From Scyliorhinus canicula (Eukaryota), in NCBI RefSeq assembly GCF_902713615.1, contig NC_052147.1, forward strand, positions 125,060,435 through 125,124,434: a stretch of DNA of 64,000 nucleotides, written 5' to 3'. Under the pieces are notes generated by a model, which saw only the letters and a list, made by a program, of their open reading frames with translations, searched no databases and had not been told where the DNA came from. The translations under genes were made by a program, and so were the position numbers. How positions within the stretch are numbered: the stretch's first letter is position 1; every line of letters starts with the position of its first letter. Shown here piece by piece: positions 1 to 64,000 of the stretch.

Positions 1-43
1 ATCTTGGATCGGCACGGGGGACCCTGCAAGCGATTACTCCGTA

Positions 44-2890
44 TTGGATGGCGACTCTGGGTTCCTGCCACGACTCGCCTCGGTGGCGCTGGATCAATCA
101 CGGCCCCGCACGCTTTCCACGGCGACTACACAGATCCAGATCAATGGTCGCAAGACGAGCTGCCTACTGGACTCCGGGAGCACAGAGAGCTTCTTCCACC
201 CCGACACGGTAAGACGCTGCGCGCTCCCCGTTCACCCAGTAAAGCACAAATTCGCTCTGGCATCTGGTTCGCACTCAGACCAAATCACCGGGTGCTGCGT
301 GGCGGACCTCACGGTCCAGAGGAGGGTTTTTAAAAACTATAAATTCCTCATCCTTCCCCGCCTCTGCGCACCGGCACTTCTCGGACTGGACTTTCAGTGC
401 AACCTGCAGAGCTTAACTTTTAAATTCGGCGGCCCTATTCCCCCCTTATTGTCTGCAGCCTCACGTCCCTCAAGGTCGACCCCCCCTTCCCTATTTGCAA
501 ACCTCACCCCGGATTGCAAACCCGTCGCCACCAGGAGCAGACGGTACAGTGCCCAGGACTGGACCTTCATCAGGTCCGAGGTCCAAAGGCTGCTGAAGGA
601 AGAGGTCATAGAGGCCAGCAACAGTCCCTGGTGAGCACAAGTGCTGGTGGTTAAGACTGGGGAGAAAAACCAAACGGTCATCGATTACAGTCAGACCATC
701 AACAGGTTTACGCAGCTGGACGCGCATCCTCTCCCCCGTATCTCCGACCTGGTTAACAGGATCGCGCAGTACAAAGTCTTTTCCACGGTAGACCTTAAGT
801 CCGCCTAATATCAACTCCCCATCCACGCGTGTGACCGAAAATACACTGCTTTCGAAGCGGATGGGCGACTCTACCACTTATTAAGGGTTCCATTTGGCGT
901 CACGAATGGGGTCTCGGTCTTCCAGAGGAAGATGGACCGAATGGTTGATCAATACGATTTACGAGCCACCTTCCCGTATCTCGACAATGTCACCATCTGC
1001 GGCCATGACCAGCAGGACCATGACACCAACCTCCGAAAATTCCTCCGTACCGCAAAACTCCTTAACCTCACGTATAATAAGGATAAATGCGTGTTTAGCA
1101 CCAACCGTCTAGCCATCCTCGGCTACGTAGTACGTAACGGAGTGATAGGCCCCGACCCCGAACGCATGCGCCCCCTAATGGAACTCCCCCTTCCCAACTC
1201 CCTCAAAGCCCTCAAACACTGTCTGGGCTTCTTTTCTTATTATGCCCAGTGGATCCCTAACTACGCCGACAAAGCCCGCCCCCTCATTCAGTCCAACACG
1301 TTCCCCCTGTCGATGGAGGGTCGCCAGGCCTTTGGCCGCGTCAAAACAGACATTGCGAAGGCCACGATGCGTGCTATCGATGAGTCCCTCCCATTCCAGG
1401 TCGAGAGCGACGCATCCGATGTAGCTCTGGCGGCCACCCTCAACCAAGCGGGCAGACCCGTGGCCTTTTTCTCCCGGACCCTCCACGCTTCCGAACTCCG
1501 CCATTCCTCGGTGGAAAAGGAGGCACAGGCCATTGTTGAAGCTGTGCGACATTGGAGGCACTATCTGGCCGGCAGGAGGTTTACCCTCCTCACAGACCAA
1601 CGGTCAGTAGGCTTCATGTTCGATAATGCACAGAGGGGCAAGATCAAGAACGATACGATCTTGAGGTGGTGGATCGAGTTGTCCACGTACAACTACGATA
1701 TCCTGTATCGTCCTGGGAAGCTCAACGAGCCTCCTGATGCCCTGTCCCACGGTACCTGCGCCAACACACAGGTGGACCGCCTCTGCACCCTCCACGCGGA
1801 CCTCTGCTATCCAGGGGTCGCCCATTTTTTTCATTTTATCAAGACCCGCAACGTGTCCTCCTCCATCGAGGAGGTCAGGACTGTAACCAGGGAATGCTAC
1901 ATTTGCGTGGAGTGCAGGACGCACTTCTACCGCCCCGAGCAGGCGCATCTTGCCCTTTTGAACGTCTTAGCATGTACTTCAAGGGTCCCCACCCCTCCAA
2001 CAACTTCAACACATATTTCTTAAATGTGATTGACAAGTACTCCCGCTTCCCATTTGCCATCCCCTGCCCCGACATGACCACATCAACGATCATCAGAGCC
2101 CTCCACTCCATTTCCTCCTTGTTCGGTTACTCCGTGTACATCCACAGCGACCGGGGGTCCTCCTTTATGAGTGACGAGCTGCGTCAATTCCTGCTCAGCA
2201 GGGGCACAGCCTCTAGCAGGACGACCAGTTATATCCCCCGGGGTAACGGTCAGGCCGAGAGGGAGAACGGTACGGTCTGGAAGACCGTCCTACTGGCCCT
2301 GCGGTCCAGGTGTCTCCCAGTCTCCCACTGGCAAGAGGTCCTCCCAGACGCCCTCCACTCTATTCGGTCTCTCCTCTGTACTGCTACAAATCAAACACAT
2401 CATGAACGTCTTCTTGTTTTCCCCAGGATGTCTTCCTCTGGGACCCCACTCCCGACCTGGCTAGCCACCCCCGGGCCCATCCTGCTCCGGAAGCATGTCG
2501 GGTGCACAAGTCCGATCCGTTGGTTGAAAGAGTCCAGTTACTCCACGCGAACCCGCAGTACACGTATGTGGAGTATCCCGACGGACGACAGGTAACGGTC
2601 TCCATTCGGGACCTGGCACCCGCCGGAGTGCGGCCACACCCCCCAGCACCAACACTCCCCCCCCCCAGTCCCGACTGCCCCCAGTGCCCCCAGCACCCCC
2701 GCAACCCCCGCAACCCAACAGGAACCCCTTCCCCCGGCCCGACTACCACTAACTCCGACCAGGGTTACAAACACAGGTCCACGACTGCAGCTCTTGGAGT
2801 CACGGACGACCACCGCTCCAACGTGACCAGCGCCGCTGCGCAGGTCCGGCAGGACACCAAAGGCACCCACCCGGCTGATCGAGTCAATTT
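44..2890 (+). pseudogene. pol: Degenerate gypsy pol (protease, RT, RNase H, integrase)
   Basis: Protease LLDSGS (ORF 44-634); RT SNSPW*, VDLKSA, PFGV, YLDN; RNase H ESDASD/SVEKEA/LTDQ/PDALS (ORF 932-2023); integrase HSDRGSSF and NGQAERENG (ORF 1894-2595). Interrupted by stops (632-634, 807-809) and frameshifts. Confidence 0.93.
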
Positions 2891-3168
2891 TTTGGACCTT
2901 ATGGACTTTCATGTTCTGCATATGTTCCTTGCCTGTGCTTTTTATTATTATTACTATGGTTATTGTTGGGTTTTTTTCTCCTGTGCACTGTATATAGCAT
3001 GGTTTTCTTAGACGTTCATTGCGGGCCAGTGGGCAGCCATAGTTACCTCAGTACTACCTGAGAAGGTCCCTAGTCATACTACCAGTTTTATGGGACATAC
3101 ACCCCCCCCCCCCCGTCTCTCCCTTCACTCCTTCCCATCCCCCCGCTTCTTTCTCAACAAGGGGTGAA

Positions 3169-3471
3169 TGTGGTAGTATGACTAGAGAGATCATATTACC
3201 AAAGAACCAAGCTGCCATTGGTACAGCAGCCTCGCTGCACATTGGCCCAGGCATGTCATGTGCCTCTCTGCCAATTGGTTGTGGCTGGTCATGTGACTCC
3301 CTATCGATTGGCTGAGAGGTTGATAGCTCCGCCTACAAGGCAGGGTATAAGAGCTCGTACCGGCTGGCAGTCGGCCTTTCTCTGTACGACCACTGCTGGG
3401 CTCATATGTAGCGTATTAAAGCCTGTTGTTTGGAACTTCACTACGACTCGAGTCCAATTGATGGTGCATCA
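3169..3471 (+). repeat. 3' LTR of family A copy 1 (303 bp)
   Basis: TG...CA termini; CCAAT/ATTGG boxes; TATAA at ~3345; ATTAAA at 3415-3420. Confidence 0.95.
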
Positions 3472-6353: not shown

Positions 6354-6585
6354 TGATGCACGATCAATTACGACGAGATTAGAGTAGAGTGTAATATTAC
6401 GCAGAGATGTGGAGCCTCCCGCAGCTGCTGCCGAAATGGCTGCAGTTCGGAGAGCACACACATTTATACTCCGCCTACTGGGCGGAGCCAGCAGGCAGGG
6501 ATCTACCCCCGTACCTGTAGTACAGGGGCCTTACCATAATACCCTCGTATGCAGTATACACAATACAACAGTGGTGACTACCACA
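6354..6585 (-). repeat. 3' LTR, family B
   Basis: Matches 10422-10662 apart from small deletions; TG/CA termini. Confidence 0.95.
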
Positions 6586-6669
6586 TTCACCCCCTGTTAA
6601 AAAAAGAGTCCAGCGGGGGTGGTGGAAAACTATTTACATACAGGTTGTTTAAAATTTAAGAAAGAGGTT

Positions 6670-9450
6670 ACAAATTTAGACGATCGGGCGCCTTGATCCG
6701 TCGTTGCGAGCGCCGCAATCGTGGTGACGATTCAGGCGTCGGTTCGTTCATCGGTGACTCCGGGAGCGCGTCAACCTCATCTTCATCCCCGGGTGGGATC
6801 AAGGGGAGGGTGGATCGTCCTGGATCGGGGGCTGCTATGGGGTGCGCTGGGGGGAGGGAGGGTGGTGCCTGGGCAGGGGGGGGGGGGGTGTGTGTGGGGA
6901 ACCAGCTGGCGCCAGGTCTCTGAGGGAGACTGTGTCTTGGCGGCCATCGGGGTACGCTACATAGGCGTACTGCGGGTTTACGTGGAGTAGCTGTACCCTC
7001 TCAACCAACGGGTCCGCCTTGTGTAGCCGCACGTACTTGCGGAGGAGAACAGGTCCTGGAGCTGCCAGCCATGTTGGGCGTGAAACCCTGGGGCAGGCAA
7101 AGAGACGTTCATGGGGAGTTTCATTAGTCGCAGTGCACAGGAGCGACCGAATGGAGTGAAGGGCGTTGGGGAGGTCCTCCTGCCAGCAAGAGGCCGGGTG
7201 ATTTCTGGACCGTAGGGCCAGCAGGAAGGCCTTTCAGACAGTCCCATTCTCCCGCTCCACCTGCCCGTTTCCCTGAGGATTGTAGCTGGTCGTCCTGCTC
7301 GAGGCAATGCCCCTGTTGAGCAGGTACTGGTGCAGCTCATCGCTCATAAATGAGGATCCCCGGTCGCTGTGGACATAGGCGGGGAAACCGAACAGAGTAA
7401 AGATGGTGTTGAGAGCTTTGATGACAGTGGCAGACGTCATGTTAGGGCATGGGATGGCAAAAGGGAATCTTGAATATTCGTCAACCACATTGAGAAAGTA
7501 TGTGTTGCGGTCGGTGGAGGGGAGGGGCCCTTTGAAGTCCACGCTGAGGCGTTCAAAGGGGCGGGATGCCTTTACCAGGCACGCACTGTCTGGCCGGTAG
7601 AAGTGCGGTTTACACTCCGCGCAGACCTGGCAGTCTCTGGTGATAGCCCTGACCTCCTCAATGGAGTAGGGCAGATTGCGGGCCTTCATGAAGTGATAAA
7701 AGTGGGTGACCCCTGGGTGATAAAGATCGTCGTGCAGGGTGCGGAATCGGTCCACTTGTGCATTGGCACATGTACCTCGGGAGAGGGCATCGGGGGGCTA
7801 GTTGAGCTTACCAGGGTGATAAAAAATCTCGTAATTGTAGGTGGAGAGCTCGATCCTCCACCTCAAGATTTTATCATTTTTGATCTTACCCCGCTGTGTG
7901 TCATTAAACATAAAGGCAACCGACCGTTGGTCAGTGAGGAGAGTGAATCTCCTGCCGGTCAGGTAATGCCTCCAATGTCGCACAGCTTCAACGATAGCTT
8001 GGGCCTCGTTTTCAACAGAGGAGTGGCGAATTTTGGAGGCATGGAGGGTGCGGGAAAAGAATGCCACGGGCCTGCCTGCCTGGTTGAGGGTGGTGGCTCG
8101 AGCGACATCTGATGCATCGCTCTCGACTTGGAAGGGGAGTGTCTTGTCGACCGCGTGCATCGCGGCCTTGGCGATGTCGGCCTTGATACGGTTGAAGGCC
8201 TGGTGAGCTTCGGCCATCAGGGGAAAACTGTGGAGTGGATGAGTGGACGGGCCTTGTCTGCACAGTTTGGGACCCACTGGGCGTAGTACGAGAAAAACCC
8301 CAGGCATCGTTTGAGGGCCTTGGGGGCCTTGGGGCAGTGGGAGTTTCATGAGGGAGCGCATGCGATTGGGGTCGGGCCCTTGAACTCCGTTCTGAACCAC
8401 ATAGCCGAGGATGGCTAATCAGTCCGTGCTGAACATGCACGACTCCTTGTTTTAGGTTAGGTTGAGGAGTTTGACGGTGTGGAGGAATTTGAAAGGTTAG
8501 CGTCGTGGTCCTGCTGGTCGTGGCCGCAGGTGGTGACGTTATCCAGGTACGGGAAAGTGGCCCGCAATCCATACCGGTCAGCCATTCAGTCCATGTCCCG
8601 TTTGAAGACTGAGACCCCGTTCGTGACGCCGAAGTGAACCCTAAGGAAGTGGTAAAGGCGGCCGTCCGCCTCAAACGCGGTGTACTGGTGGTCCGCCTTG
8701 CGAATGGGGAGCTGGTGGTAGGCAGATTTCAGGTCCACTGTCGAGAAGACCAGGTAATGGGCAATCTGATTGACCATATCAGATACACGTGAGAGGGGGT
8801 ACGCGTAGAGCTGCGTGTGCCGATTGATGGCCTGACTGTTGTCAACGACCATCCTGTTTTTCTCCCCAGTTTTCACCACAACCACTTGGGCTCACTAGGG
8901 GCTGTTGCTGGCCTCGTTAATACTTTCCCACAGCAGCCGCTGGACCTCAGATCTGATGAAGGTCCTGTCCTGGGCACTGTACCGTCAGCTCCTGGTGGCG
9001 ACGTGTTTGCAATACGGGGTGAGGTTCGCAAACAGGGAAGGTGGGTCGATCTTAAGGGTCGTGAGGCCGCATTCAGTAAGGGGTGGTTGGGGCTCACCAA
9101 ATTTCAGTGTTGGGCTCTGGAGGTTGCACTGGAAGTCTAGGCCGAGTAGCAAGGCAGCGCAAAAGTTGGGGAGGACGTAGAGCTGGAAGCTGCTGAACTC
9201 TACACCCTGGATGGTGAGGGTGGCGGTGCAATTCCCCCGGATCGCCAGGGAGATTCTCTGGTTGATAGGGTGTACCGTGAGGGAGCAGCACCTTACCATA
9301 TCGGGGCGGATGAGCTCTCAGTGCTCCTGGAATCCAGAAGGCAGGATATCTTGTGCTCGTCGACCTTCACTGTCGTCGACGCGGTCGCGATGTTGTGCGG
9401 TCGGGACTGGTCGATCGTGATGGAGGCCAGACATGGCTGATAGGCGGCAA
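6670..9450 (-). pseudogene. pol: Degenerate gypsy pol, family B
   Basis: CLLDS (protease); VDLKSAYHQ and YLDN (RT); ESDASD (RNase H); HxxxxH...CQVC zinc finger and VDFKGP/HSDRG/VERENG (integrase, ORF 7234-7755). Multiple frameshifts. Confidence 0.92.
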
Positions 9451-10395
9451 TAAGCGGCCTGATGAGGTGCCCGATGAGCAGGGGTCCTGAGGTGCGGAAG
9501 ATGGCAGCCTCCACGGGCTCCACGTTTCATGGGGCAGGCATGATGGCGGTGCCCAGGGGTCGCTCGTGTTGTGAGGCGAGTAAGATGGCGAGCAAGATGG
9601 CGGCGCCCACGGGCTCCACGTGGTCTGAGGCGAGCAAGATGGCGCCCACGGGCTCCACGTGTTCTGAGGCGAGGAAGATGGCGGCGTCCGCGGGTCGCAC
9701 ATGGGGGGTGCCAGGGCAATAGTGGCGACCAAGCGGGCTTGGCACACAGCAGCAAAATGTCCTTTCTTCCCGCAGGCCTTGCAGAGAGCACTCTGTGCCG
9801 GGCAGCACTGTCAGGGGTGTTTTGACTGTCCGCAGAAGCAGCACTTGGGTCCCCAGGGTTGGTTGGCTGCCTCGGGGGCATATGCCTGTATATTGCGTTA
9901 GGCGACTGTGAGCTTGGTCGCCGCGAGTTCGAGGGTAGCCGCTTCTAAGAGTCGCTGGCAGATGTAGGCTGACCCTATGCCTGTAACAAACGCGTCTCTA
10001 AGTAGGAGGTCAGAATGTTCAGCGGCCGAAACGGCCTGGCAATCGCAGTCTCTCACCAGGAGTTGCAGGGTACGCCAGAAATCTTCCACAGACTCACCGG
10101 GGAGTTGGTGCCACGTGGAGAGGAGGTGCCTGGCATAGATTTTGTTGGTCTGCTGAGTATAGTTCTCCTTCAGTTGCGCCATGGCCTCAGCGTAGGTTGG
10201 CGCGTCCCGGATGAGGGGAAAGATGTCGGAGCTCAGACCCGTGTAAAGGATCTGGAGCTTCTGTGCCTCTGAGGGTGGTTCTGTCACAGATCCGATGTAT
10301 GTCTTGAAGCAAGCTAGCCAATGTGCGAAGGCCAACTTGGCGTTGTCTGCTTGAGGGTGCAGCTGCAGGCGATCAGGCTTGATGCGGAGGCCCAT
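9450..10395 (-). pseudogene. gag: Degenerate gypsy gag, family B
   Basis: ORF 9898-10395 MGLRIKPDRL...RDAFVTG is homologous to the family A gag at 54479-54799; paired CCHC knuckles CCFCGQSKHP...CKACGKKGHFAAVC at ~9745-9845. Confidence 0.88.
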
Positions 10396-10421
10396 CGTTT
10401 TAAAATCTCTGCGTAATAAAT

Positions 10422-10662
10422 TGATGCACTATCAATTACGACAAGACGAGAGTAGAGTGTAATCGAGGCTTTATTAAGCAGAGATGTGTAGCCTCCCGCA
10501 GCTGCTACCAAAATGGCTGCAGTTCGGAGAGCCCACACATTTATACTCCACCTACTGGGGGGAGCCAGCAGGCAGGGATCTACCCCCGTACCTGTAGTAC
10601 AGGGGCCTTACCGTAATACTCTCTTATGCAGTATACACAATACAACAATGGTGACTACCACA
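10422..10662 (-). repeat. 5' LTR, family B (241 bp)
   Basis: TG/CA termini; minus-strand TATAAA at ~10541-10546 and AATAAA at 10470-10475. Confidence 0.95.
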
Positions 10663-43271: not shown

Positions 43272-43500
43272 TGATGCACGATCAATTGCACGAAAGACTC
43301 AGATTGGTACAACTGTGGCTTTATTACAGTCAGATGCGTGGCCTCCTACTGCAGCTGGTGAAATGGCTGATCAGGAGGAGGTCATGCCTATTTATATGGC
43401 TCCTTGTGGGCGGTGCTAGCCGGCAGGGGCTACTGGTGAACCTGTAGTGCAGGTCGGACCTTACATCCCCTAATACAGGTGCACACAGTGGATCACCACA
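43272..43500 (-). repeat. Solo LTR of the gypsy lineage (229 bp)
   Basis: Sense TGTGGTG...GTGCATCA; 5-bp TSD TTTAT; TATAAA and AATAAAGCC present. Confidence 0.92.
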
Positions 43501-43601: not shown

Positions 43602-43894
43602 TGTGGTGAATGTAATATATGAATGTACTAATTCACACTGTTATTGTAAGCGCAGTAGCGCCATCCTACCACTAGGGGGAGTAGCGCTGGGAGCACTTAG
43701 GAACTTGTACTGGGCTCCACCCTTGGTTCCACCCACGACTCCTCCCCCTAGTGCAGCTGTATAAGTATCCGTGTCCAGAGTCAGCCTGGGTCACTACGAG
43801 TTCATCGACAGGTAACAGGCTGGTTCTGAAGTAAGTCAATTAAAGCCTAGATTCACATCGGAAACACATGTCTGGTGAATTGATGGTTCCATCA
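43602..43894 (+). repeat. Solo LTR of the gypsy lineage (293 bp)
   Basis: TGTGGTG...AATTGATGGTTCCATCA; 5-bp TSD CCCCT; TATAA at ~43760; ATTAAAGCC at ~43839. Confidence 0.92.
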
Positions 43895-48955: not shown

Positions 48956-50440
48956 TGACATGTCATGGCAAACATCAGGAGCGGATGGCCCAAGATTTGA
49001 CCACAGAGCCTTGAGCTACTTGACAATACAGAAGAAAACAAACCTGAGCTCATGCCAAGCACCTACTGTTTGCGCAGATGTGATTACCATAATTTATTGT
49101 GTTTTGTATGAACATAATTTGAGGAATCATGCAACATATCTTCAAACAGCATCATTGCTGTAATTTTAACCTATTACAATAATATCAAACAGACTGCCCA
49201 ATTTTCTCTTTTATTAAAGTCAGTCAGTCAAATCCAATAATGCCATTTTACACTATTATCAGAAGTTGAAATTCTCTTTTTTTTTTAGAGATAATGGAGT
49301 TTATCGGATTATTACAAAGTTAAAATCATCGTTGTACAGAAGTCAAAGAAATGTGCGTTAATTTCAGCAGCAATTAAAAATTCTACCCTCAGGCTTGGGC
49401 ACTGGTTACTTTGTGAATATTGCTGTAATTGCATTGCAGAATTGGCTCAGCAGATGGTTTCTTCAAATCGTACACTGAACTTCAATCACTCCTCCACACA
49501 GCTGACATTACTTTAATGTGTAAAGCAACATGGCCCACGGTCCTTCATACCCAACAGATAATAAACGATTGATAACCTTTTCCAAAACAGGACAGTTCAC
49601 ATTTACGGCTAGAAATAGATCAGAAAATAAGCTTCGCTCCAATGTAGTTATTGGGTTCGGCAGGGGGAGAGGACACTCAAAAGATTAGGCATATCAGACT
49701 TCCCTTCACTCGAATTTAACACTAACTGAAGCTGGTGAATGATAAGGGGCTAAAATTAGGCAGCACCTGTTTTTGGGCATGGGGTAATGATTTGGGATCT
49801 GTGCTGGTCGCGTTGAGGCAGGCAGTATGCTCGCCTGCAGCTCTTATATGGGGCCTCTTGCTTGCAATATAGCATCCTTGCAAACTGCTCACAATGGGGC
49901 AAAGTGAGAGGCAGGCAGCACAAACTGATCCGGTCAGTTTGGGGATTGAACACACAAACATTCGAACATTGGCCCCTTGAGCCTGTTCCCCAATTAATAA
50001 GATTATTTTTTATCTGATAATAACCTCAAATCTGCATCTCCCTGATAACCTTTAACCCACTTGTTTACCAAGATTCCATCTAGCTTTGCTTTAAAAATCT
50101 TCAAAGATTCTGCTTCCACCACCTTACCAGGAACAGAGTTCCAAAGACTCACGACCCTCTGATTTTGCCTCATCTCCATTTTAAATAGGCAACCCCTTAT
50201 TTTTAAACAGTGACCCCTAGATAAAGATCCTTCCACAAGAGGGAACATCCTCGCCACATCCACCCTGTCAATAGCCCTCAGGATCTGAAACGTTTTGATC
50301 AAGCTGTCTAATGCTTTTCTAAACTCCAGTGGATACAAACCTAAAATGTCCAGCCTATGCTCATAAAACAACTGCCCGTTTCTGGCATTATTCGCGTCTC
50401 ACAACTGCTTCCAACAGGTTTATATACTTCTTTAAATAAG

Positions 50441-50655
50441 GGCCGGAATTCCTCGGCCATTCACTGGCGACGGGATCCTCGAGTCCCGCTGGCAGTGCAC
50501 CCACGCCCATGGGTATCCTGGCAGCTTGGGGGGGGGGGGGTTCAATAGAAATTCCCATTGAGAGTAGCGGGAGCAGAGAATACCACTACCAGCTAATGGC
50601 GTGCCGTCTCCCACCGAGGAGAAACACGCAGCTAAGATGCCAGACAATCCTGCCC
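50441..50655. mobile_element. Short Harbinger-type MITE
   Basis: GGCCGGAATT...AATCCTGCCC; TSD AAG, inside CR1. Confidence 0.78.
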
Positions 50656-50772
50656 AAGGTGACCAATAATGTACACAATGCTCTAGGTGTGGTCTCACCA
50701 ACGTCCTGTATAGCTTAAGCACAACCTCCCTACTTTTGTATTCAATTCTCCTCACAATAAACAATAACATTC

Positions 50773-53700
50773 TGATGCACCATCAATTGTACTTGAGTCG
50801 TAGTGAAGTTCCAAACAACAGGCTTTAATACGCCAGATGTGAGCCCGGCAGTGGTCATACAGAGAAAGGCCGACTGCCAGCCAGTATGAGCACTTATACC
50901 CCACCTTGTAGGCGGAGCTACCAACCTCTCAGCCAATCGGCGGGGAGTCACATGACCAGCTATAACCAATTGGCAGAGAGGCACATGACTTGCCTGGGCC
51001 AATGGGCAGCGAGGCTGCTGTACCAATGGCAGCTTGGTTCTTTCGTAATGTGATCTCTCTAGCCATACTACCACATTCACCCCTTGTTGAGAAAGAAGCG
51101 GGGGGATGGGTGGGTGGGAAGGAGTGGCGGGAGAGACGGGGGGGGGGCTGTAAAACTAGTAGTATGACTAGAGACCTTCTCGGGTAGTACCGAGGTAACT
51201 ATGGCTGCCCACTGGCCTGCGACGAACGTGTAAGAAAACTATACTATATACAGTGTACAAGGGAAAAAACAACAATAACCATCGTAATAATAATGGGAAC
51301 AAAACAAAAAAAAACACAGGCAAGGAACATATGCAGAACGTGAAAGTCCATAAGGTCCATCAAATTGACTCGATCAGCCGGATGGTTGCCTTCGATGTCC
51401 TGCCGGACCTGCGCAGCGGTGCCAGCGACGTTGGAGCGGTGGTTGTCCGAGACTCCGGGAGCTGTGGTCGCGGTCCTGTGTCCGTACCCCTGGTCGGAGC
51501 TGGTGGTAGCCGGGCCGGGGGGAGGGGTTCCTGTGCGCTGGGTTGCGGGGGCGCTGGGGGTGCTGGGGGCACTGGGGGCAGTCGGGACTGAGGGAAGGGT
51601 GTTGGTGCTGGGGGATGTGGCCGCACTCCGGCGGGTGCCAGGTCCCGAATGGAGACCGTGTCCTGCCGACCGTCGGGATACTCCACATACGCGTACTGCG
51701 GGTTAGCGTGGAGTAACTGGACTCTTTCAACCAACGGGTCGGACTTGTGCACCCGCACATGCTTCCGGAGCAGGATGGGCCCGGGGGTAGCCAGCCAGGT
51801 CGGGAGTGGGGTCCCAGAGGAAGACTTCCTGGGGAAAAGAAGAAGACGTTCATGATGTGTTTGATTTGTGGCAGTACAGAGGAGAGACCGAATAGAGTGG
51901 AGGGCGTCTGGGAGAACCTCCTGCCAGTGGGAGACTGGGAGACACCTGGACCGTAGGGCCAGTAGGACGGTCTTCCAGACTGTACCATTCTCCCTCTCGA
52001 CCTGACCGTTACCCCGGGAGTTATAACTGGTCGTCCTGCTAGAGGCGATGTCCCTGCTGAGCAGGAATTGACGCAGTTCGTCACTCATAAAGGAGGACCC
52101 CCGGTCGCTGTGGATGTACACGGGGTAACCGAACAGGTTGCCTCCTTTTCCACTGAGGAATGGCGGATTTCGGAACCATGGAGGGTCCGGGAGAAAAAGG
52201 ACACGGGTCTGCCCGCTTGGCTGAGGGTGGCCGCCAGAGCTACATCGGACACGTCGCTCTCAACCTGGAATGGGAGGGACTCATCGATAGCGCGCATCGT
52301 GGCCTTTGCAATGTAATTTTTGATGCGGCTAAAGGCCTGGCGGGCCTCCATCGACAGTGGAAACGTGTTGGACTGGATGAGGGGGCGGGCTTTGTCGGCG
52401 TAGTTAGGGACCCACTGGGAATAATAAGAAAAAAAGCCCAGACAGCGTTTGAAGGAGTTGGGAAGGGGGAGTTCTATTAGGGGGCGCATGCGTTCGAGGT
52501 CAGGGCCTATCACTCCATTACGCACTACGTAGGCGAGGATGGCTAGACGGTGCTTATCCTTATTATACGTGAGGTTAAGGAGCTTTGCGGTTCGGAGGAA
52601 TTTACGGAGGTTGGTGTCGTGGTCCTGCTGGTCATGGCCGCAGATGGTGACATTGTCGAGATACGGGAAGGTGGTGATGCACCATCGATTGCACGCGAGG
52701 CGAGTGATTTACCAATGTCAGGCTTTAATTAACTAGAACACAGCCTGGCGATCGTCTACAGTGGAAAGGAACGATCGTCAGGCTTCTGAGCATTTATACC
52801 TCGTTGATAGAGGCGTGGTTAACTCAGCCTCTCGGCCAATCGGTCGAGAGGCACATGACCGACCAGGGCCAATGGTAAGCCGACGTTCTGGCCCAATGGC
52901 AGACGAGTATGCAGATCATATCATCACAGGTGGCTCGTAAATCGTATTGGTCAATCATCCGGTCCATCTTCCTCTGGAAGACCGAGACCCCATTCATGAC
53001 ACCAAAAGGAACCCTTAAAAAGTGGTAGAGTCGCCCATCCGCTTCGAACGCAGTGTACTTTCGGTCACTCGTGCGGATGGGGAGCTGGTGGTAGGCGGAC
53101 TTAAGGTCCACCGTGGAAAAAACTTTGTACTGCGCGATCCTGTTAACCAGGTCGGAGATACGGGGGAGAGGATATGTGTCCAGTTACGTAAACCTGTTGA
53201 TGGTCTGACTGTAATCGATGACCATACGGTTTGTCTCTCCAGTCTTAACCACCAGCACTTGTGCTCTCCAGGGACTGTTGCTAGCCGCAATGACCCCTTC
53301 CTTCAGGAGCCTTTGGACCTCGGACCTGATGAAGGTCCAGTCCTGGGCACTGTACCGTCTGCTCCTGGTGGCGACGGGTTTGCAATCCGGGGTGAGGTTT
53401 GCAAACAAGGAAGGGGGGTTGACCTTGAGGGACGCGAGGCTGCAGACAGTAAGGGGGGGAATAGGGCCACCGAATTTAAAAGTTAAGCTCTGCAGGTTGC
53501 ACTGAAAGTCCAGTCCAAGAAGTGCCGGTGCGCAGAGGCGGGGAATGATGAGGAATTTATAATTTTTAAAAACCCTCCCCTGGACCGTGTGATTTGGACG
53601 GAGTGTGAACCAGATGCCAGAGCTATTTTGTGCTTTACGGGGTGAACGGGGAGCGCGCAGCGTCTTACCGTGTCGGGGTGGACAAAACGCTCTGTGCTTC

Positions 53701-55119
53701 CGGAGTCCAGCAGGCAGCTCATCTCGCGACCGTTGAGGTGGATCTGTGTGGTCGCCGTGGAAAGCGTGTGGGGCCGTGATTGATCCAGCGTCACCGAGGC
53801 GAGTCGTGGCAGGAACTCGGAGTCATCATCCAATACGGAGTAATCGCTTGCGGGGTCCTCCGTGCCGATCCAAGATGGCGGCGCCCATCGGCCGTACGTG
53901 GTGGGGGATGAACAAGATGGCGGCACCCTGGGGTCACACGTGGAGTCGGCCGTGGATCACTCGTGGTGGTGGGGGGTGGAGTCAGCGAGGAGTGCAGGGA
54001 GGGGTGCCGCGGTCGCTGTCTGGAACGGCAGCGACTGACTTGGAGAGGCAGACGGCCGCGAAATGGCCCTTTTTGCCGCAGCTCTTGCAGACTGCGGTGC
54101 GGGCGGGGCAGCGTGGGCGGGGGTGCTTGGCCTGCCCGCAGAAATAGCAGCGGGGGCCCGTGGGCTTGTCTGGGCGTCCTGCAGCCCAGGTCTGGGTGTC
54201 TCAGTCGGCGGGTGCGAGTGGGGTGTCCCATGCTGCCACGGGGCTGCCGTGCGGCCAGGAGTATACGCGCCCGCATTGGGGTCAGCGACCTCCAAGGAGG
54301 ATGCAAGGGTCCGTGCCTCAGTGAGGCTGAGAGTGTCCTTTTCTAACAGTCTCTGGCGTATTTGGGGTGACTGCATGCCCGCTACAAAGGCGTCCCTGAT
54401 CAAGAGTTCGGTGTGCTCCGCAGCAGTGACCTGCGGGCAGGCGCAATTTCTCCCCAGGACAATGAGGTCCTGATAGAATTAATCGAGGGACTCACCGGGG
54501 AATTGTTGCCTTGTTGCCAGGAGGTGCCGCACGTAGGCCTGGTTTACTGGCCTGATGAAGTGTCCTTTTAGAAGATCCATAGCGACATCATAGTCCAGTT
54601 CGTCCTCTATCATCGAGTAAACGGCGGTGCCCACGCACGAGTGGAGGATGTGGAGTTTCTGCTCCTTTGTTGGTCGATTTTCTGCAGTAGTGAGGTAGCT
54701 GTTGAAGCACGCCAGCCAATGTTTAAAAGTTGCTGACGCGTTTGCAGCATGCGGGCTGATCCGGAGGCATTCTGGCTTAATCCGTAGTTCTATTTTCAAA
54801 GTCTAGCGTATTAAATTGATGCACCATCAATTGGACTCGAGTTGTAGTGAAGTTCCAAACAACAGGCTTTAATACGCTAGATGTGAGCCCGGCAGTGGTC
54901 ATACAGAGAAAGGCCGACTGCCAGCCGGTACGAGCTCTTATATCCTGCCTTGTAGGCGGATCTACCAACCTCTCAGCCAATCGGCAGGGAGTCACATGCC
55001 CAGCCACAACCAATTGGCAGAGAGGCACATGACTTGCCTGGGCCAATGGGCAGCGAGGTTGCTGTACCAATGGCAGCTTGGTTCTTTGGTAATATGTTCT
55101 CTCTGGCCATACTACCACA
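50773..55119 (-). mobile_element. Ty3/gypsy LTR retrotransposon, family A copy 2 (internal deletion, nested solo LTR)
   Basis: 303-bp LTRs at 50773-51075 and 54817-55119; TSD CATTC; PPT complement at 51076; gag (ELRIKPECL..., paired CCHC at ~54050-54150), PR LLDSGS, RT, partial RH and partial IN. Confidence 0.97.
52675..52928 (-). repeat. Solo LTR (254 bp) nested in RT of family A copy 2
   Basis: Sense TGTGATG...GGTGCATCA; TSD GGTGG; TATAAA and ATTAAAGCC present. Confidence 0.93.
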
Positions 55120-56907
55120 CATTCCATAAGTTTTCCCAATTACTTGCTGTACCTGTATACTAGTCTTTTGTGATTGATGCACTAGGACACCCAGATTCCT
55201 CTCCATCTCAGAGCTCTGCAATCTCTTACCATTTCGATAATATGCTCCTCTTTTCTTCTCCCTTCTAAAATGGGCAATTTGATATTTTCCCACAGCGTAT
55301 TGTGGACAACAGTGACTTTCTCAAAGAGCTGCAGCCCCACCCTGTTTAGTGTTTGTGTGAACCATCCCAAATTAGGCACACCAACAGGTCCCCACCCCAT
55401 AACCTGCAGTCGGCGTCTATCCCATTCCACTAATTCATGTGCTTTTCCTTGGACCCTCTTGTTTGCCTGTGTCACATGCAGACTTGTCAGTGTCCAGCTT
55501 TCATCTCCTTGGTCTTCCTCTGCATTTCATTGTTCATCTCCTTCATCCACCTCCTTTCCCCTCTGCCTGCCATCATGACCTTTAACCCCTTGCACATCCT
55601 GCTCCTTGCACAGCCTTCCTTCCACATTGGCACACTAGTCTTTGCTTGTCTTCATTGTATCACCACCCCGTGGCCTCTCCTGGCACTCCGCACCTGGTCG
55701 AACTTGTGACCTTTGTTGTGGTGGCTGCAGGAGTCAAGCAGCACAGTAATGTCTGGTATGTGGCAGCAGGATGTAGGAGACCCCTGTACTCCCCAGCCCC
55801 AGGCACAGTACTGATCTGACTTGATGACTCAGGAGGGTCCATAGGTCCAGAAGCACGATGGTGTCCATGAAGACCAGCTCTGCATGGAGATGGGGGCAGA
55901 AACCGGACTGCCTGGCAGAGTGATGAACAGCGCACCAAGAGCAGTGCAGCACTATGGCAGAAAGTTGTTGCACTCGTCTCAAAGTCTCTGGTGAACTGAG
56001 GCCAGTCTTTATCGATCGGGTTTAACAACAAAGTGATTTCCCGCTGGTGTAATGCAAGATTGAAAGGCCTGACAGGATGCCAGTGGGCAGCTGTTTAAAT
56101 GAGCATTCATCAGATGCAAATGGCATTGACATCACCTGCCAGCGGCAATAGCGACTCTCCGTTAACCCGAAATTGGGAGAATTGCAACTTGATTTTATGC
56201 TAGCAGGCTTCCGCCTTTTTGGTTCCTGACAAATTCTCCCCGCCCGCCCACCACCAAACGTGCATCGGGCGGATTGAGTGAATTCTGCTCCTTGTCTCGG
56301 ACCCACTCCTCTCTCCCTCAAACTGAATGTAAAATTCAATCATATTATGGTCAATGCTACCTAAGCCTCTCTTCACTATGAGATCATTAATAACTTCCAT
56401 CTCATTGCATATTACCAGGTCTAGTTTAACCTACTCTCTAGTTGGCTCCAGAACAGAAACTATCCCGGAAACATTCTATGAACTCCTCATTTAGGCTATC
56501 TCTGCCCATCGGATTTTTGCAGTGTATTTGTAGTTTAAAATCTCCATGACTAGCACTGTGCCTTCTGACAAGCTCCTATTAGTTCTTTAAGCTCCACCCC
56601 GCTATGTAGTTACAATTGGAGGGCCTGTACACGACTCCCACAAGTGACTGCTTGCCTTCATCATTTCTCATCTCTGCCCAAATCCTTTCCACATCCTGGT
56701 TTCCTGAATTTAGCTCATCCCTCTCTATCAAGCTAACTCCATCATTAACTAACAGAGCCAACCCTTGACCCTCTCCTCGCTTCCTGCCCTACCTAAATGT
56801 CCTGTACCCTTCAATATTCAGTTCCCAATCCATGTCCCCCTGCAGCTTTACCTCCATAATGACTACCAAAGCACACTTAGTCATTTTTATGTACACACTC
56901 AGTTCAT

Positions 56908-59917: not shown

Positions 59918-60792
59918 TCAACTGCACTTGACTGATTGGGTGCATAACTCCAAATGTGCTAAAGAGAGCTTCCTTAACCACATCCCAAGTTTCTCCCTGT
60001 GTTTGTTGCATGAAAATTGCTCAGAAAAGTCACTCAGTGCAACATGATGGAATGAAGTCCGTTTCACTGCTGTCATGAATAGGGTGTGATCCCCACAGCC
60101 GGGATAGGGTGTAATGAAATTGTACAGAGGCAGTTCCGCAAACAATCAGCACTGATCTCTCCTGCACATATTGCAGGATTGAGCACATTGCCGATGCGAC
60201 AAATCACAACGCTCATCTGATCGACATATTTTTGACCCTGATGTCATGACATTAAGGGTCAATTACTGTGTGATCCTTGAATGAATTAGCTGATTTTGCA
60301 GAGCCAAGTGAGCGGCCTGAATTAGAAAATTAAGTGCAGAGGCTAGTGCAATTGATTTATAATCAGCTTCTACCCAGGGACAAAAGGACTGTTGATCCCT
60401 GCTGCCACCGTCTGACAGGCAAGGAGCACTGCCCTGCAGTGTCAAGCAGAGACTGTCTTCCAACCCATCATTTATTACAGGCAGCCTGAGTCACTGAAAA
60501 TACATTCAGTGCAGCGTTACTCTGACACACATTCCCCATTTCATGTTGGTCTTTTTACCTTGCCATCACTTACATTCCATTCCCACCCACAACTGTGGAA
60601 AAGGTTGATAAATATCATGTAAACATTTTCAACATTCACAAAGTCTGAAATCTTATTTTATTCCACAAGCAGCAACTTTACTTTAATACATGCAACCATT
60701 TGATATCGGAGTCACATGTTGCCTCTGCCCCATTAAATTGAAGATAATGCTAATTATTCAAAAGGTCTGGCTCTGTAAAATTGTACAACGTC

Positions 60793-63700
60793 GGGCAGGC
60801 TGTGAGCAGTCTAACCAGGCAGGATGTGGGCTAGCTGACCGGGCAGGATGTGGGCTACCTGGGTGGGCAGGATGTGGGCTAGCTGGCTGGGCAGGATGTG
60901 GGCTAGCTGGCTGGGCAGGATGTGGGCTAGCTGGCTGGGTAGGATGTGGGCTAGCTGGCCAGGCAGGATGTGGGCCAGCTGACCGGGCAGGATGTGGGCT
61001 AGCTAACCGGGCAGGATGTGGGCTAGCTGGCACGGCAGGATGTGGGCTAGCTGGCTGGGCAGGATGTGGGCTAGCTGACCGGGCAGGATGTGGGCTAGCT
61101 GGCCGGGCAGGATGTGGGCTAGCTGGCCCGGGCAGGATGTGGGCTAGCTGGCCGGGCAGGATGTGGGCTAGCTGGCCGGGCAGGATGTGAGCTAGCTGGC
61201 CAGGCAGGATGTGGGCTAGCTGGCCGGGCAGGATGTGGGCTAGCTGGCTGGGCAGGATGTGGGCTAGCTGGCCCGGGCAGGATGTGGGCTAGCTGGCCGT
61301 GCAGGATGCGGGCTAGCTGGCCGGGCAGGATGTGGGCTAGCTGACCGGGCAGGATGTGGGCTAGCTGGCCGGGCAGGATGTGGGCTAGCTGGCCGGGCAG
61401 GATGTGGGCTAGCTGGCCGTGCAGGATGTGGGCTAGCTGACCAGGCAGGATGTGGGCTAGCTGGCCGGGCAGGATGTGGGCTAGCTGGCTGGGCAGGATG
61501 TGGACTAGGTAACCGGGCAGGATGTGGGCTAGCTGGCCGGGCAGGATGTGTGCTAGCTGACCGGGCAGGATGTGGGCTAGCTGGCCGGGCAGGATGTGGG
61601 CTAGCTGGCCGGGCAGGATGTGGGCTAGCTGACCGGGCAGGATGTGGGCTAGCTGGCCGGGCAGGATGTGGGCTAGCTGGCCGTGCAGGATGTGGGCTAG
61701 CTGGCCGGGCAGGATGTGGGCTAGCTGGCCGGGCAGGATGTGGGCTAGCTGGCCGGGCAGGATGTGGGCTAGCTGGCCGGGCAGGATGTGGGCTAGCTGG
61801 CCGGGCAGGATGTGGGCTAGCTGGCCGGGCAGGATGTGGGCTAGCTGGCCGGACAGGATGTGGGCTAGCTGACCAGGCAGGATGTGGGCTAGCTGGCTGG
61901 GCAGGATGTGGGCTAGCTGACCGTGCAGGATGTGGGCTAGCTGGCCGGGCAGGATGTGGGCTAGCTGACCAGGCAGGATGTGGGCTAGCTGGCTGGGCAG
62001 GATGTGGGCTAGCTGGCCGGGCAGGATGTGGGCTAGCTGACAGGGCAGGATGTGGGCTAGCTGGCGGGCCCGGGCAGGATGTGGGCTAGCTGGCCGGGCA
62101 GGATGTGGGCTAGCTGGACGGGCAGGATGTGGGCTAGCTGACCGGGCAGGATGTGGGCTAGCTGGCCGGGCAGGATGTGGGCTAGCTGGCCGGGCAGGAT
62201 GTGGGCTAGCTGGCCCGGGCAGGATGTGGGCTAGCTGGCCGGGCAGGATGTGGGCTAGCTGACCGGGCAGGATGTGGGCTAGCTGGCCGTGCAGGATGTG
62301 GGCTAGCTGGCCGGGCAGGAAGTGGGCTAGCTGGCTGGGCAGGATGTGGGCTAGCTGGCCGGGCAGGATGCAGGCTAGCTGGCCGCGCAGGATGTGGGCT
62401 AGCTGGCGGGCCCGGGCAGGATGTGGGCTAGCTGGCCGGGTAGGATGTGGGCTAGCTGGCCGGGCAGGATGTGGGCTAGCTGGACGGGTAGGATGTGGGC
62501 TAGCTGACCGGGCAGGATGTGGGCTAGCTAACCGGGCAGGATGTGGGCTAGCTGGCTGGGCAGGATGTGGGCTAGCTGACCGGGCAGGATGTGGGCTAGC
62601 TGGCCGGGCAGGATGTGGGCTAGCTGGCCCGGGCAGGATGTGGGCTAGCTGGCAGGGCAGGACGTGGGCTAGCTGACCGGGCAGGATGTGGGCTAGCTGG
62701 CCGGGCAGGATGTGGGCTAGCTGGCCGGGCAGGATGTGGGCTAGCTGACAGGCCAGGATGTGGGCTAGCTGGCTGGCCCGGGCAGGATGTGGGCTAGCTG
62801 GCCGGCCAGGATGTGGGCTAGCTGGACAGGCAGGATGTGGGCTAGCTGATCGGGCAGGATGTGGGCTAGCTGGCCGGGCAGGATGTGGGCTAGCTGGCCG
62901 GGCAGGATGTGGGCTAGCTGGCCCGGGCAGGATGTGGGCTAGCTGGCCGGGCAGGATGTGGGCTAGCTGACCGGGCAGGATGTGGGCTAGCTGGCCGTGC
63001 AGGATGTGGGCTAGCTGGCCGGGCAGGATGTGGGCTAGCTGGCCCGGGCAGGATGTGAGCTAGCTGGCCGGGCAGGATGTGGGCTAGCTGGATGGGCAGG
63101 ATGTGGGCTAGCTGGCCGGGCAGGATGTGGGCTAGCTGGCCGGGCAGGATGTGGGCTAGCTGGCTGGGCAGTATGTGGGCTAGCTGGCTGGGCAGGATGT
63201 GAGCTAGCTGGCCGGGCAGGATGTGGGCTAGCTGACCATGTAGGATGTGGGCTAGCTGGCCGGGTAGGATGTGGGCTAGCTGGCGGGGCAGGATGTGGGC
63301 TAGCTGGCCGGGCAGGATGTGGGCTAGCTGGCCGGGCAGGATGTGGGCTAGCTGGCTGGGCAGGATGTGGGCTAGCTGGCCTGGCAGGATGTGGGCTAGC
63401 TAACCGGGCAGGATATGGGCTAGCTGACCGGGCAGGATGTGGGCTAGCTGGCCGGGCAGGATGTGAGCTAGCTGGCCGGGCAGGATGTGGGCTAGCTGGC
63501 TGGGCAGGATGTGGGCTAGCTGGCCGGGCAGGATGTGGGCTAGCTGACCGTGCAGGCTGTGGGCTAGCTGGCAGGGCAGGATGTGGGCTAGCTGGCCGGA
63601 CAGGATGTGGGCAGGCTGACCGGGCAGGATGTGGGCTAGCTGACTGGGCAGGAAGTGGGCTAGCTGGCCGGGCAGGATGTGCGCTAGCTGGCCGGGCAGG

Positions 63701-64000
63701 ATGTGGGCTAGCTGGCCGGGCAGGAGGTGGGCTAGCTGGCCGGGCAGGATGTGGGCTAGCTGGACGGGCAGGATGTGGGATAGCTGGCCGGGCAGGATGT
63801 GGGCTAGCTGGCCCGGACAGGATGTGGGCTAGCTGACCGGGCAGGATGTGGGCTAGCTGACCGGGCAGGAGGTGGGCTAGCTGGCCGGGCAGGATGTGGG
63901 CTAGCTGACCGGGCAGGATGTGGGCTAGCTAACCGGGCAGGATGTGGGCTAGCTGGCGGGGCAGGATGTCGGCTAGCTGGCCGGGCAGGGTGTGGGCTAG
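60793..64000 (+). repeat. 24-bp minisatellite (GGGCAGGATGTGGGCTAGCTGGCC)n, ~130 copies, continues past the window
   Basis: Directly visible tandem array; variants mostly in the TGGCC/TGACC/TGGCT segment. Confidence 0.99.

What the first reader, a model, noticed from the sequence alone, without database searches (positions are those of the whole stretch)
54802..54881. Gypsy lineage with no tRNA PBS: the primer site is complementary to the element's own poly(A)-signal region, with covariation between families
Seen: in family A the sense sequence after the 5' LTR is CA|a-TTTAATACGCTAGA (plus 54802-54815), with no TGG. It is the exact 14-nt reverse complement of TCTAGCGTATTAAA inside the LTR (plus 54868-54881). 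Family B has CA|a-TTTATTACGCAGAGAT (10405-10420) pairing with ATCTCTGC(G/T)TAATAAA (10470-10485; its 3' LTR keeps the matching base). The sequences differ between families but the pairing is kept, and the paired strand ends on the A(A/T)TAAA hexamer 1 nt from the LTR edge, where a primer 3' end must sit. Known: Tf1/sushi-group elements self-prime from the extreme 5' end of their RNA. Inference: here the partner begins ~60 nt after the TATA box (roughly +30 of the transcript), so this looks like a variant self-priming mechanism with cleavage just after the hexamer, in a lineage with paired CCHC Gag and no visible chromodomain. I cannot tell whether this is already catalogued.
Basis: partly seen in the sequence, partly recalled or inferred. 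Interest (0 to 1): 0.9.

Follow-up and report, generated by a model that had tools for sequence, protein, structure and literature searches.

The report
Self-primed Gypsy retrotransposons in a shark
Two decayed Gypsy-type jumping genes in this shark-like window have no tRNA primer site. The bases right after the 5' repeat pair with a piece of that repeat ending on its poly(A) signal, as in relatives from comb jellies to sharks, so these elements most likely prime their own copying.

Summary
In element A (50773-55119, minus strand) the 14 nt after the 5' LTR are the exact reverse complement of an LTR segment ending in ATTAAA. In element B (6354-10662) it is 16 nt with one mismatch.

The same design recurs in 31 of 39 related loci fetched from catsharks, a sea cucumber, Trichinella and marine metagenomes; named relatives also occur in Mnemiopsis and Mytilus. 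Across 22 distinct families, duplex positions 1-12 are Watson-Crick paired in 21-22 families, with 2-4 pair types per position. No primer site starts with TGG.

The best reading is Tf1-like self-priming in a compact (~4 kb, single ORF) Gypsy lineage with two CCHC knuckles and no chromodomain. The primer's 3' end would lie at the poly(A) hexamer.

RNA reads were too few to map the start site. That claim also creates a mechanistic problem, a 5' flap on the primer.

I could not name the clade; Mag-like is only a lead. The scan has noted this feature many times elsewhere in this genome, and one follow-up agent reached the same reading.

The parts
50773..55119 (-). Element A. A decayed 4347-bp Ty3/Gypsy element, ordered gag(2xCCHC)-PR-RT-RH-INT, flanked by the 5-bp target duplication CATTC.
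   Evidence: LTR pair, about 93% identical over the 300 nt compared. Edges and duplication read. ORF pieces and Pfam hits. CCHC pair.
54817..55119 (-). 5' LTR of A (303 bp, TG...CA). It carries CCAAT-like boxes and the TATAAG box at 54942-54937.
54868..54881 (-). A's self-primer candidate ('box'), TCTAGCGTATTAAA. Its last six bases are the ATTAAA hexamer (54873-54868), followed by the invariant GCC.
54802..54815 (-). A's primer-binding site, TTTAATACGCTAGA, 1 nt (A, 54816) after the LTR. The gag start (ATA, a decayed ATG, 54793-54791) follows 8 nt later.
   Evidence: Exact 14-nt complement of 54868-54881.
50773..51075 (-). 3' LTR of A. Its box reads TCTGGCGTATTAAA, one change from the 5' copy. 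It is preceded by the polypurine tract AAGGGGTGAA.
6354..10662 (-). Element B. A decayed 4309-bp relative of A (72-79% identical over the two 300-nt internal stretches compared), flanked by the target duplication AGCTG.
10470..10485 (-). B's box, ATCTCTGCTTAATAAA, in the 5' LTR (10422-10662). TATAAA lies at 10545-10540, and the initiator-like CCATTTT has its A at 10514, 29 nt 5' of the box.
10405..10420 (-). B's primer-binding site, TTTATTACGCAGAGAT, 1 nt after the LTR. The gag ATG (10395-10393) follows 9 nt later.
3169..3471 (+). 3' LTR of a third copy, of family A, on the plus strand. Its body occupies 1-3168 and its 5' end lies outside the window. The box is decayed to TGTAGCGTATTAAA.
43272..43500 (-). 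Solo LTR of family C (target duplication TTTAT). Box ATCTGACTGTAATAAA; no PBS is present.
52675..52928 (-). Solo LTR of family D, inserted in the RT region of element A (target duplication CCACC). Box GTTCTAGTTAATTAAA.
   Evidence: RNA reads of a D-type element carry the PBS predicted from this box, 15 of 16.
43602..43894 (+). Solo LTR of family E (target duplication CCCCT). The hexamer region reads GTAAGTCAATTAAAGCC.

Best explanation
A and B are dead copies of a compact Ty3/Gypsy lineage. It is about 4 kb long, has one gag-pol ORF of about 1240 aa with two CCHC knuckles, has short LTRs, and lacks a chromodomain. The lineage does not use a tRNA primer.

Shown:
- The 12-16 nt that start 1 nt after the 5' LTR are the reverse complement of an LTR segment 20-66 nt upstream.
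- That segment usually ends on the poly(A) hexamer followed by RCC.
- The two segments change together from family to family.

Inferred mechanism, by analogy with Tf1:
1. In the genomic RNA the LTR segment folds back on the post-LTR block.
2. The element's RT/RNase H cuts the RNA right after ...TAAA.
3. The new 3' OH primes minus-strand DNA through the spacer A and U5, up to the cut.
4. The short strong-stop DNA transfers to the 3' copy through the 10-30 nt between the hexamer and the poly(A) site.
5. Plus-strand strong-stop synthesis copies the primer back into the PBS.

Step 5 would re-homogenise the two partners at each cycle and so explain the covariation without any separate selection.

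Open point: whether the primer begins at the first base of the RNA, as in Tf1, or 15-38 nt inside it. I put the internal case at about 0.55.
For: - Exact or near-exact pairing in A and B, placed where a primer's 3' end must sit.
- The leader leaves no room for another PBS: gag starts 8-9 nt after the block in A and B, and 0-3 nt after it in several relatives.
- Other shark families show the same design with different letters: L005 16/16, L006 15/15, L008 11/11, L091 15/15.
- 31 of 39 loci with an intact 5' end score 10 or more, against shuffled leaders at about 7.
- In 22 families, positions 1-12 are Watson-Crick paired in 21-22, with 2-4 pair types each. Own box with own PBS matches 8.4 of 9 variable positions; other families' boxes match 4.7 of 9.
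- In six shark families, 8 of 14 pairs show compensatory changes.
- Elements with identical or 99% identical LTRs and intact ORFs keep the duplex (L019 14/14, L013 13/13, L015 18 bp with one mismatch), so the design belongs to recently active copies.
- RNA reads from this species carry the leader of a D-type element. Its PBS is the complement (15 of 16) of the box in solo LTR D of this window.
- Self-priming of this general kind is established for Tf1 and predicted for the Tf1/sushi, Tcn1 and TAR groups (PMC7175516, PMC6317226, PMC10085805).
Against: - There is no direct evidence of priming, cleavage or RNA ends. Read depth on the LTR was 1-10 and no start or end pile-ups were reported.
- The three-duplex 'pretzel' that Tf1 needs was not recovered. 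The consensus fold of six shark families keeps only the central duplex.
- If the TATA/initiator prediction is right, the primer carries a 15-38 nt 5' flap. Plus-strand strong-stop DNA would copy that flap, which needs a second cut or an RT stop that nothing here demonstrates.
- The host tRNA set could not be searched: there are no tRNA genes in the window, and the 20 loci scanned yielded one doubtful call.
- Four families pair without a recognisable hexamer.
Confidence: 0.72

Rival explanations
1. Ordinary Tf1-type self-priming, not a variant. Transcription of the replication-competent RNA starts at the first base of the box, so the primer is the extreme 5' end of the RNA. The upstream TATA either drives a different, non-replicative transcript or is not a working TATA.
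For: - Complementarity stops sharply after 12-16 bp in 22 families. In Tf1 that boundary is the RNA 5' end (PMC7175516, PMC10085805).
- A flap-free primer avoids a non-homologous tail on plus-strand strong-stop DNA (inference).
- Tf2 is known to use alternative start sites that decide whether the RNA carries the self-primer (PMC5341516).
- Invertebrate LTRs of 140-210 bp mostly lack a TATA.
Against: - In all 11 shark LTRs and in L091, TATAA lies 60-78 nt 5' of the box (60-71 in all but solo LTR E). In most of them an initiator-like CCA(T/G)TT or CTCAGTC lies 31-34 nt after it, the standard metazoan spacing.
- The L002 family has the same TATA-CCATTTC pair 15 nt 5' of its box.
- The bases just 5' of the box do not fit an initiator consensus.
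Confidence: 0.33
2. The stem is mainly a regulatory or structural hairpin, for example one that hides the poly(A) hexamer in the 5' LTR copy only. Minus-strand synthesis is primed by something else.
For: - The stem sequesters the hexamer, and its partner exists only downstream of the 5' LTR. This idea was also raised in note s1-240236.
- The fold is stable: -27.2 and -22.4 kcal/mol, z-scores -4.6 and -4.3.
Against: - The block sits exactly 1 nt from the LTR edge, where the primer's 3' end defines U5.
- No other sequence fits between the LTR and gag.
- Four families keep the pairing without a hexamer.
- No block begins with TGG.
- The two roles are not exclusive, so masking could be an added function.
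Confidence: 0.1
3. The block is a binding site for a tRNA, a tRNA fragment or another host RNA.
For: Internal tRNA fragments are used by some copia elements (PMC6317226). The host tRNA set could not be searched here.
Against: 22 families have 22 different blocks, and each matches its own LTR. None starts with TGG, the complement of the CCA end. A host primer would have to differ for each family and also match each LTR.
Confidence: 0.02

Closest known systems
Tf1/Tf2 of Schizosaccharomyces pombe and the Tf1/sushi group (self-primed chromoviruses; PMC7175516, PMC10085805, PMC4600332)
   Same: There is no tRNA PBS. [quoted passage not shown] The duplex has a similar length (11 nt in Tf1, 12-16 here). 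Both are Ty3/Gypsy elements with a 5-bp target duplication, and many have a single gag-pol ORF.
   Different: There is no chromodomain in the window copies or in any of the 120 best relatives. Gag has two CCHC knuckles. The consensus fold shows no 'pretzel' flanking duplexes. The primer's 3' end coincides with the poly(A) hexamer. Promoter motifs put the RNA start 15-38 nt upstream of the primer, whereas in Tf1 the primer is bases 1-11 of the RNA. The hosts are animals from ctenophores to sharks.
Mag lineage of Ty3/Gypsy, especially the C-clade (SURL; Jule in fish) as described in PMC3601003, PMC6238403 and PMC8220671
   Same: It is a non-chromoviral, metazoan-wide lineage that includes vertebrates. 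LTRs are very short (mean 174 bp for Mag C). The LTR end motifs TGTNATRT...AYANAACA resemble the invertebrate relatives found here (TGTGATGA...TTACAACA). Jule is 4.8 kb with 202-bp LTRs (from my memory of its abstract).
   Different: Membership was not tested by phylogeny, because no reference sequences were reachable. Shark LTRs end in GTGCATCA, not AACA. I found no statement in the searchable library about how Mag-lineage elements are primed.
Predicted self-priming in plant Tcn1 (chromovirus) and TAR (Ty1/copia) lineages (PMC6317226)
   Same: Self-priming is inferred from complementarity between the PBS and the LTR, without experiments. This shows that the trait is scattered across LTR retrotransposons.
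   Different: These are different superfamilies or clades with plant hosts. No link to the poly(A) hexamer is reported.

Membership tests
Ty3/Gypsy (Metaviridae) LTR retrotransposon | TG...CA LTRs with a 4-6 bp target duplication, and a polypurine tract before the 3' LTR | tested here: met
   A has CATTC, B has AGCTG, and solo LTRs have TTTAT, CCACC and CCCCT. The polypurine tract is A(A)GGGG(G)TGAA.
Ty3/Gypsy (Metaviridae) LTR retrotransposon | Domain order gag-PR-RT-RH-INT, with RT/RNase H of the Ty3 type | tested here: met
   Pfam hits to RVT_1, RT_RNaseH, rve and Integrase_H2C2 on window pieces and on intact relatives. The best solved relative is Ty3 Gag-Pol, E 5e-57.
Tf1/sushi group | Chromodomain at the C-terminus of integrase | tested here: not met
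   No PF00385 hit in the window's integrase tail, in P0054 or P0061, or in the precomputed domains of the 120 best relatives.
Tf1/sushi group | PBS complementary to the element's own LTR R region instead of a tRNA | tested here: met
Tf1/sushi group | Self-primer is the extreme 5' end of the mRNA | tested here: inconclusive
   RNA reads were too few to map ends. The TATA/initiator spacing predicts a start 29-38 nt upstream in shark families.
Tf1/sushi group | Three-duplex 'pretzel' RNA structure around the primer:PBS duplex | tested here: inconclusive
   RNAalifold on six shark families keeps only the central 14-bp duplex. Single-sequence folds extend the stem differently in A and B.
Tf1/sushi group | RT/INT phylogeny places the element with Tf1, sushi-ichi and similar elements | not tested
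   No reference sequences could be obtained with the tools.
Mag lineage (C-clade-like) | Short LTRs with end motifs TGTNATRT...AYANAACA (PMC3601003) | tested here: inconclusive
   Invertebrate relatives have 106-207 bp LTRs ending ...TTACAACA, CTACAACA or ATAACA. Shark LTRs are 230-303 bp and end GTGCATCA.
Mag lineage (C-clade-like) | RT/RH/INT phylogeny places the element with SURL, Jule or Mag | not tested
   No reference sequences were reachable.
tRNA-primed LTR element | PBS starts with TGG and matches a tRNA 3' end | tested here: not met
   None of the 22 family blocks, nor L091's, starts with TGG, and the blocks differ between families. The host tRNA set itself was not searchable.

The most novel reading that the evidence does not exclude
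A metazoan-wide, non-chromoviral Gypsy lineage primes reverse transcription from an internal segment of its own R region. That segment's 3' end is the poly(A) hexamer. One stem would then do two jobs: it hides the 5' poly(A) signal, and after two cuts (one after the hexamer, one removing the 5' flap) it supplies the primer. This would be a self-priming mechanism distinct from Tf1's and possibly independent in origin.
Probability: 0.3. Interest if true: 0.75.

Novelty: new variant of a known kind. Interest (0 to 1): 0.62.

Why it matters
Self-priming has been demonstrated only in fission-yeast Tf1 and is treated as a hallmark of the Tf1/sushi chromoviruses. Here the same logic appears in a different Gypsy lineage. 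That lineage is very widespread in animals and includes recently active copies.

- Self-priming would be either much older or more easily re-invented than thought.
- tRNA-based PBS finders will misannotate thousands of animal elements.
- The tie between the primer's 3' end and the poly(A) hexamer suggests a compact switch between polyadenylation and replication. It could be tested on a small RNA hairpin.

Tried and rejected
- RNA mapping of the start and poly(A) sites. Contig ends coincide with variable positions, so they are assembly breaks, not RNA ends.
- RNA-derived contigs of an intact relative (P0061). All eight contigs are DNA metagenomes.
- Host tRNA comparison. There are no tRNA genes in the window, the 20 fetched loci scanned yielded one doubtful call, and Rfam found nothing at gathering score.
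- Naming the clade. The protein searches returned no clade names. The SURL, mag, Lin & Levin 1997 and Atwood-Moore 2006 papers are not held.
- A U5-internal TGG (TGGTGCATCA) as a hidden tRNA site. Rejected: it lies inside both LTRs, and the TGG is not kept in other families.
- Pairing between the predicted 5' flap and the gag start. A 9-bp bulged match exists in B only and is absent in A and L005, so I dropped it.
- Two of the last look-ups gave no DNA because the files were too large.

Full report
**What is in the window.** Both sites lie in LTR retrotransposons whose sense strand is the minus strand.
- Element A spans 50773-55119 (4347 bp). Its LTRs are 303 bp and about 93% identical over the 300 nt compared, and its target duplication is CATTC.
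- Element B spans 6354-10662 (4309 bp). Its LTRs are 241 and 232 bp, and its target duplication is AGCTG.
- Both carry broken reading frames in the order gag, protease, RT, RNase H, integrase. Gag has two CCHC knuckles. Pfam finds no chromodomain in the integrase tail.
- A third, partial family-A copy lies on the plus strand and ends at 3471.
- Three solo LTRs of further families are present, each with its own 5-bp duplication: C at 43272-43500, D at 52675-52928 inside A's RT region, and E at 43602-43894.

**The observation.**
- In sense orientation A reads ...GGTGCATCA|A|TTTAATACGCTAGA. The 14 nt after the spacer A are the exact reverse complement of TCTAGCGTATTAAA, which lies 52 nt upstream in the LTR.
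- B reads ...AGTGCATCA|A|TTTATTACGCAGAGAT against ATCTCTGCTTAATAAA, 15 of 16.
- B's 3' LTR has the matching G but has lost the hexamer through a 9-nt deletion. A's 3' LTR has one change in the block.
- Chance is negligible. About 2e-5 exact 14-mers are expected by my arithmetic, and shuffled leaders reach 9 at most.
- The gag start follows the block by 8-9 nt (ATG in B, a decayed ATA in A). No other primer site fits between the LTR and gag.

**Relatives.**
- A search with B's Gag N-terminus found 1166 cluster representatives. They include intact single-ORF gag-pol proteins of 1236 and 1246 aa (P0054, P0061) with two CCHC knuckles, PR, RT, RH and INT but no chromodomain.
- None of the 120 best relatives of P0061 has a chromodomain.
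- Named hosts are Scyliorhinus torazame, S. canicula, Apostichopus japonicus, Trichinella sp. T6, Trichuris suis, Mytilus species and Mnemiopsis leidyi.
- The best solved relative is Ty3 Gag-Pol.
- DNA around the gag start was fetched for 12 loci by exact protein look-up and for 80 loci from metagenome contigs.

**Test of the pairing in relatives.**
- Other shark families pair with different letters:
  - L005: ATCTTTGCTCAATAAA with TTTATTGAGCAAAGAT (16/16).
  - L006: ATCTTGTGCAATAAA with TTTATTGCACAAGAT (15/15).
  - L008: AGCTGATTAAA with TTTAATCAGCT (11/11).
  - L091: CTTTTGCTAATAAAA with TTTTATTAGCAAAAG (15/15).
- The Trichinella locus has a 15-bp duplex with only a 20-nt loop. The sea cucumber locus has 12 bp.
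- Overall, 31 of 39 loci with an intact 5' region score 10 or more. Shuffled leaders average about 7.
- In 22 distinct families, duplex positions 1-12 are Watson-Crick paired in 21-22 families, with 2-4 pair types per position. A family's own box and PBS match at 8.4 of the 9 variable positions, against 4.7 of 9 for other families' boxes, even allowing five offsets.
- RNAalifold on six shark families finds 14 pairs, 8 of them with compensatory changes.
- Copies with identical or 99% identical LTRs and intact ORFs keep the duplex (L019 and L013 exact, L015 one mismatch in 18), so this is the design of active elements.
- One prediction was met. Solo LTR D's box is GTTCTAGTTAATTAAA. RNA reads of this species that carry D-type U5 sequence continue into a leader whose PBS is the complement of GTTGTAGTTAATTAAA, a 15 of 16 match.

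**What is constant and what is not.**
- The block always begins right after ...CA plus one A.
- The inner end of the duplex is A(A/T)TAAA in all vertebrate families and in several invertebrate ones. It is GTTAAA or TTTAAA in six families and no hexamer in four (L002, L041, L046, L048). It is usually followed by GCC or ACC.
- Pairing is therefore universal, while the overlap with the poly(A) signal is common but not obligatory.
- In sharks this hexamer is the only one I see between the TATA box and the LTR end (reading the alignment), so it is the likely poly(A) signal.

**Mechanism.**
- The arrangement matches the logic shown for Tf1. [quoted passage not shown]
- Here the cut would fall after ...TAAA. 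Minus-strand DNA would copy the spacer A, U5 and the remainder of R up to the cut. It would then transfer through the 10-30 nt between the hexamer and the poly(A) site.
- Because plus-strand strong-stop DNA copies the primer, the PBS is rewritten from the box at each cycle. This explains the tight covariation without extra selection.
- These steps are inferred; none was observed.

**The 'variant' claim.**
- In 11 aligned shark LTRs the TATAA box is invariant, and it lies 60-62 nt 5' of the box in most of them. An initiator-like CCA(T/G)TT sits 31-34 nt after it in most.
- L091 has TATAAA, then CTCAGTC at +34, then the box at +72.
- The marine L002 family has TATATAT-CCATTTC 15 nt 5' of its box.
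- Against it, an internal primer keeps a 15-38 nt 5' flap. Plus-strand strong-stop DNA would copy that flap and so gain a non-homologous tail. Yet complementarity stops sharply after 12-16 bp in all families.
- A second cut, an RT stop, or an alternative start at the box (as Tf2 uses alternative starts, PMC5341516) would resolve this.
- RNA reads could not decide.

**Comparison with known groups.**
- Self-priming is regarded as a common feature of the Tf1/sushi chromoviruses. It is predicted for plant Tcn1 and copia TAR elements (PMC6317226, PMC10085805).
- The present lineage fails the chromodomain criterion and shows no conserved 'pretzel'. I therefore do not file it under Tf1/sushi.
- Its size, short LTRs and LTR-end motifs resemble the Mag lineage, C-clade (PMC3601003, PMC6238403). 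No phylogeny was possible, so this stays a lead.
- Eight full-text searches found no report of self-priming in a non-chromoviral animal Gypsy lineage. The library lacks the older SURL, mag and Jule papers, so prior description cannot be excluded.

**Earlier notes of this scan.** The same feature has been noted many times on other pieces of this genome. One follow-up agent (s1-195922) reached the same reading. I treated these as leads only; every claim above rests on my own calls.

Noticed in passing
window 52675-52928 (inside element A, 50773-55119): A solo LTR of a fourth family (D) is inserted in A's RT coding region, between ...DLRAT and FPYLDN..., with the target duplication CCACC. This nesting is part of why A's frames look so broken.
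   Followed up: yes
window 932-2023 (+) and alignment A1 of 25 intact relatives: RT motif C reads Y(L/I)DN instead of YxDD. The D is invariant and the N is present in at least 90% of intact relatives, some of which have identical LTRs. P0054 is an exception with YLDD. The library records YVDN only for the C. elegans BEL-like elements Cer7-12, with activity untested (PMC554778).
   Followed up: partly
window 60792-64000: A 24-bp tandem satellite (consensus GGCAGGATGTGAGCTAGCTAACCA) of about 133 copies, about 90% matching, with a 48/72-bp higher-order period. It runs to the end of the window.
   Followed up: partly
window 43272-43500 and 43602-43894: Two solo LTRs of different families (C on the minus strand, E on the plus strand) lie 101 bp apart, with target duplications TTTAT and CCCCT.
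   Followed up: yes
window 54817-54832 and the U5 ends of all shark LTRs: The last 13 nt of U5 are a small palindrome (TGATG-NNN-CATCA) within the conserved AATTGATNGTGCATCA. It may be an integrase site, or a U5 stem-loop like the U5-IR stem-loop named in the title of Lin & Levin 1998 (paper not read here). No covariation was seen in six families.
   Followed up: partly
RNA runs X23, X24 and X14 laid on window 54680-55180: Leader reads of other families are expressed. A D-type leader has the PBS TTTAATTAACTACAAC followed by ATG GAG TTC CGC. One contig has the PBS TTTAATTCACTAGTT, and its LTR box was not seen.
   Followed up: partly
window 50432-50770 (-): An ORF fragment (…LYRTLVRPHLEHCVHYWSP…) looks to me like the tail of a LINE-type reverse transcriptase. 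It abuts element A's insertion site, which suggests that A landed in an older LINE copy.
   Followed up: no
loci L009 and L036/L056: In a Trichinella element and one metagenome family only 20-21 nt separate the hexamer from the PBS. The poly(A) site must therefore lie at or near the LTR's last CA, and U5 may be almost absent.
   Followed up: no
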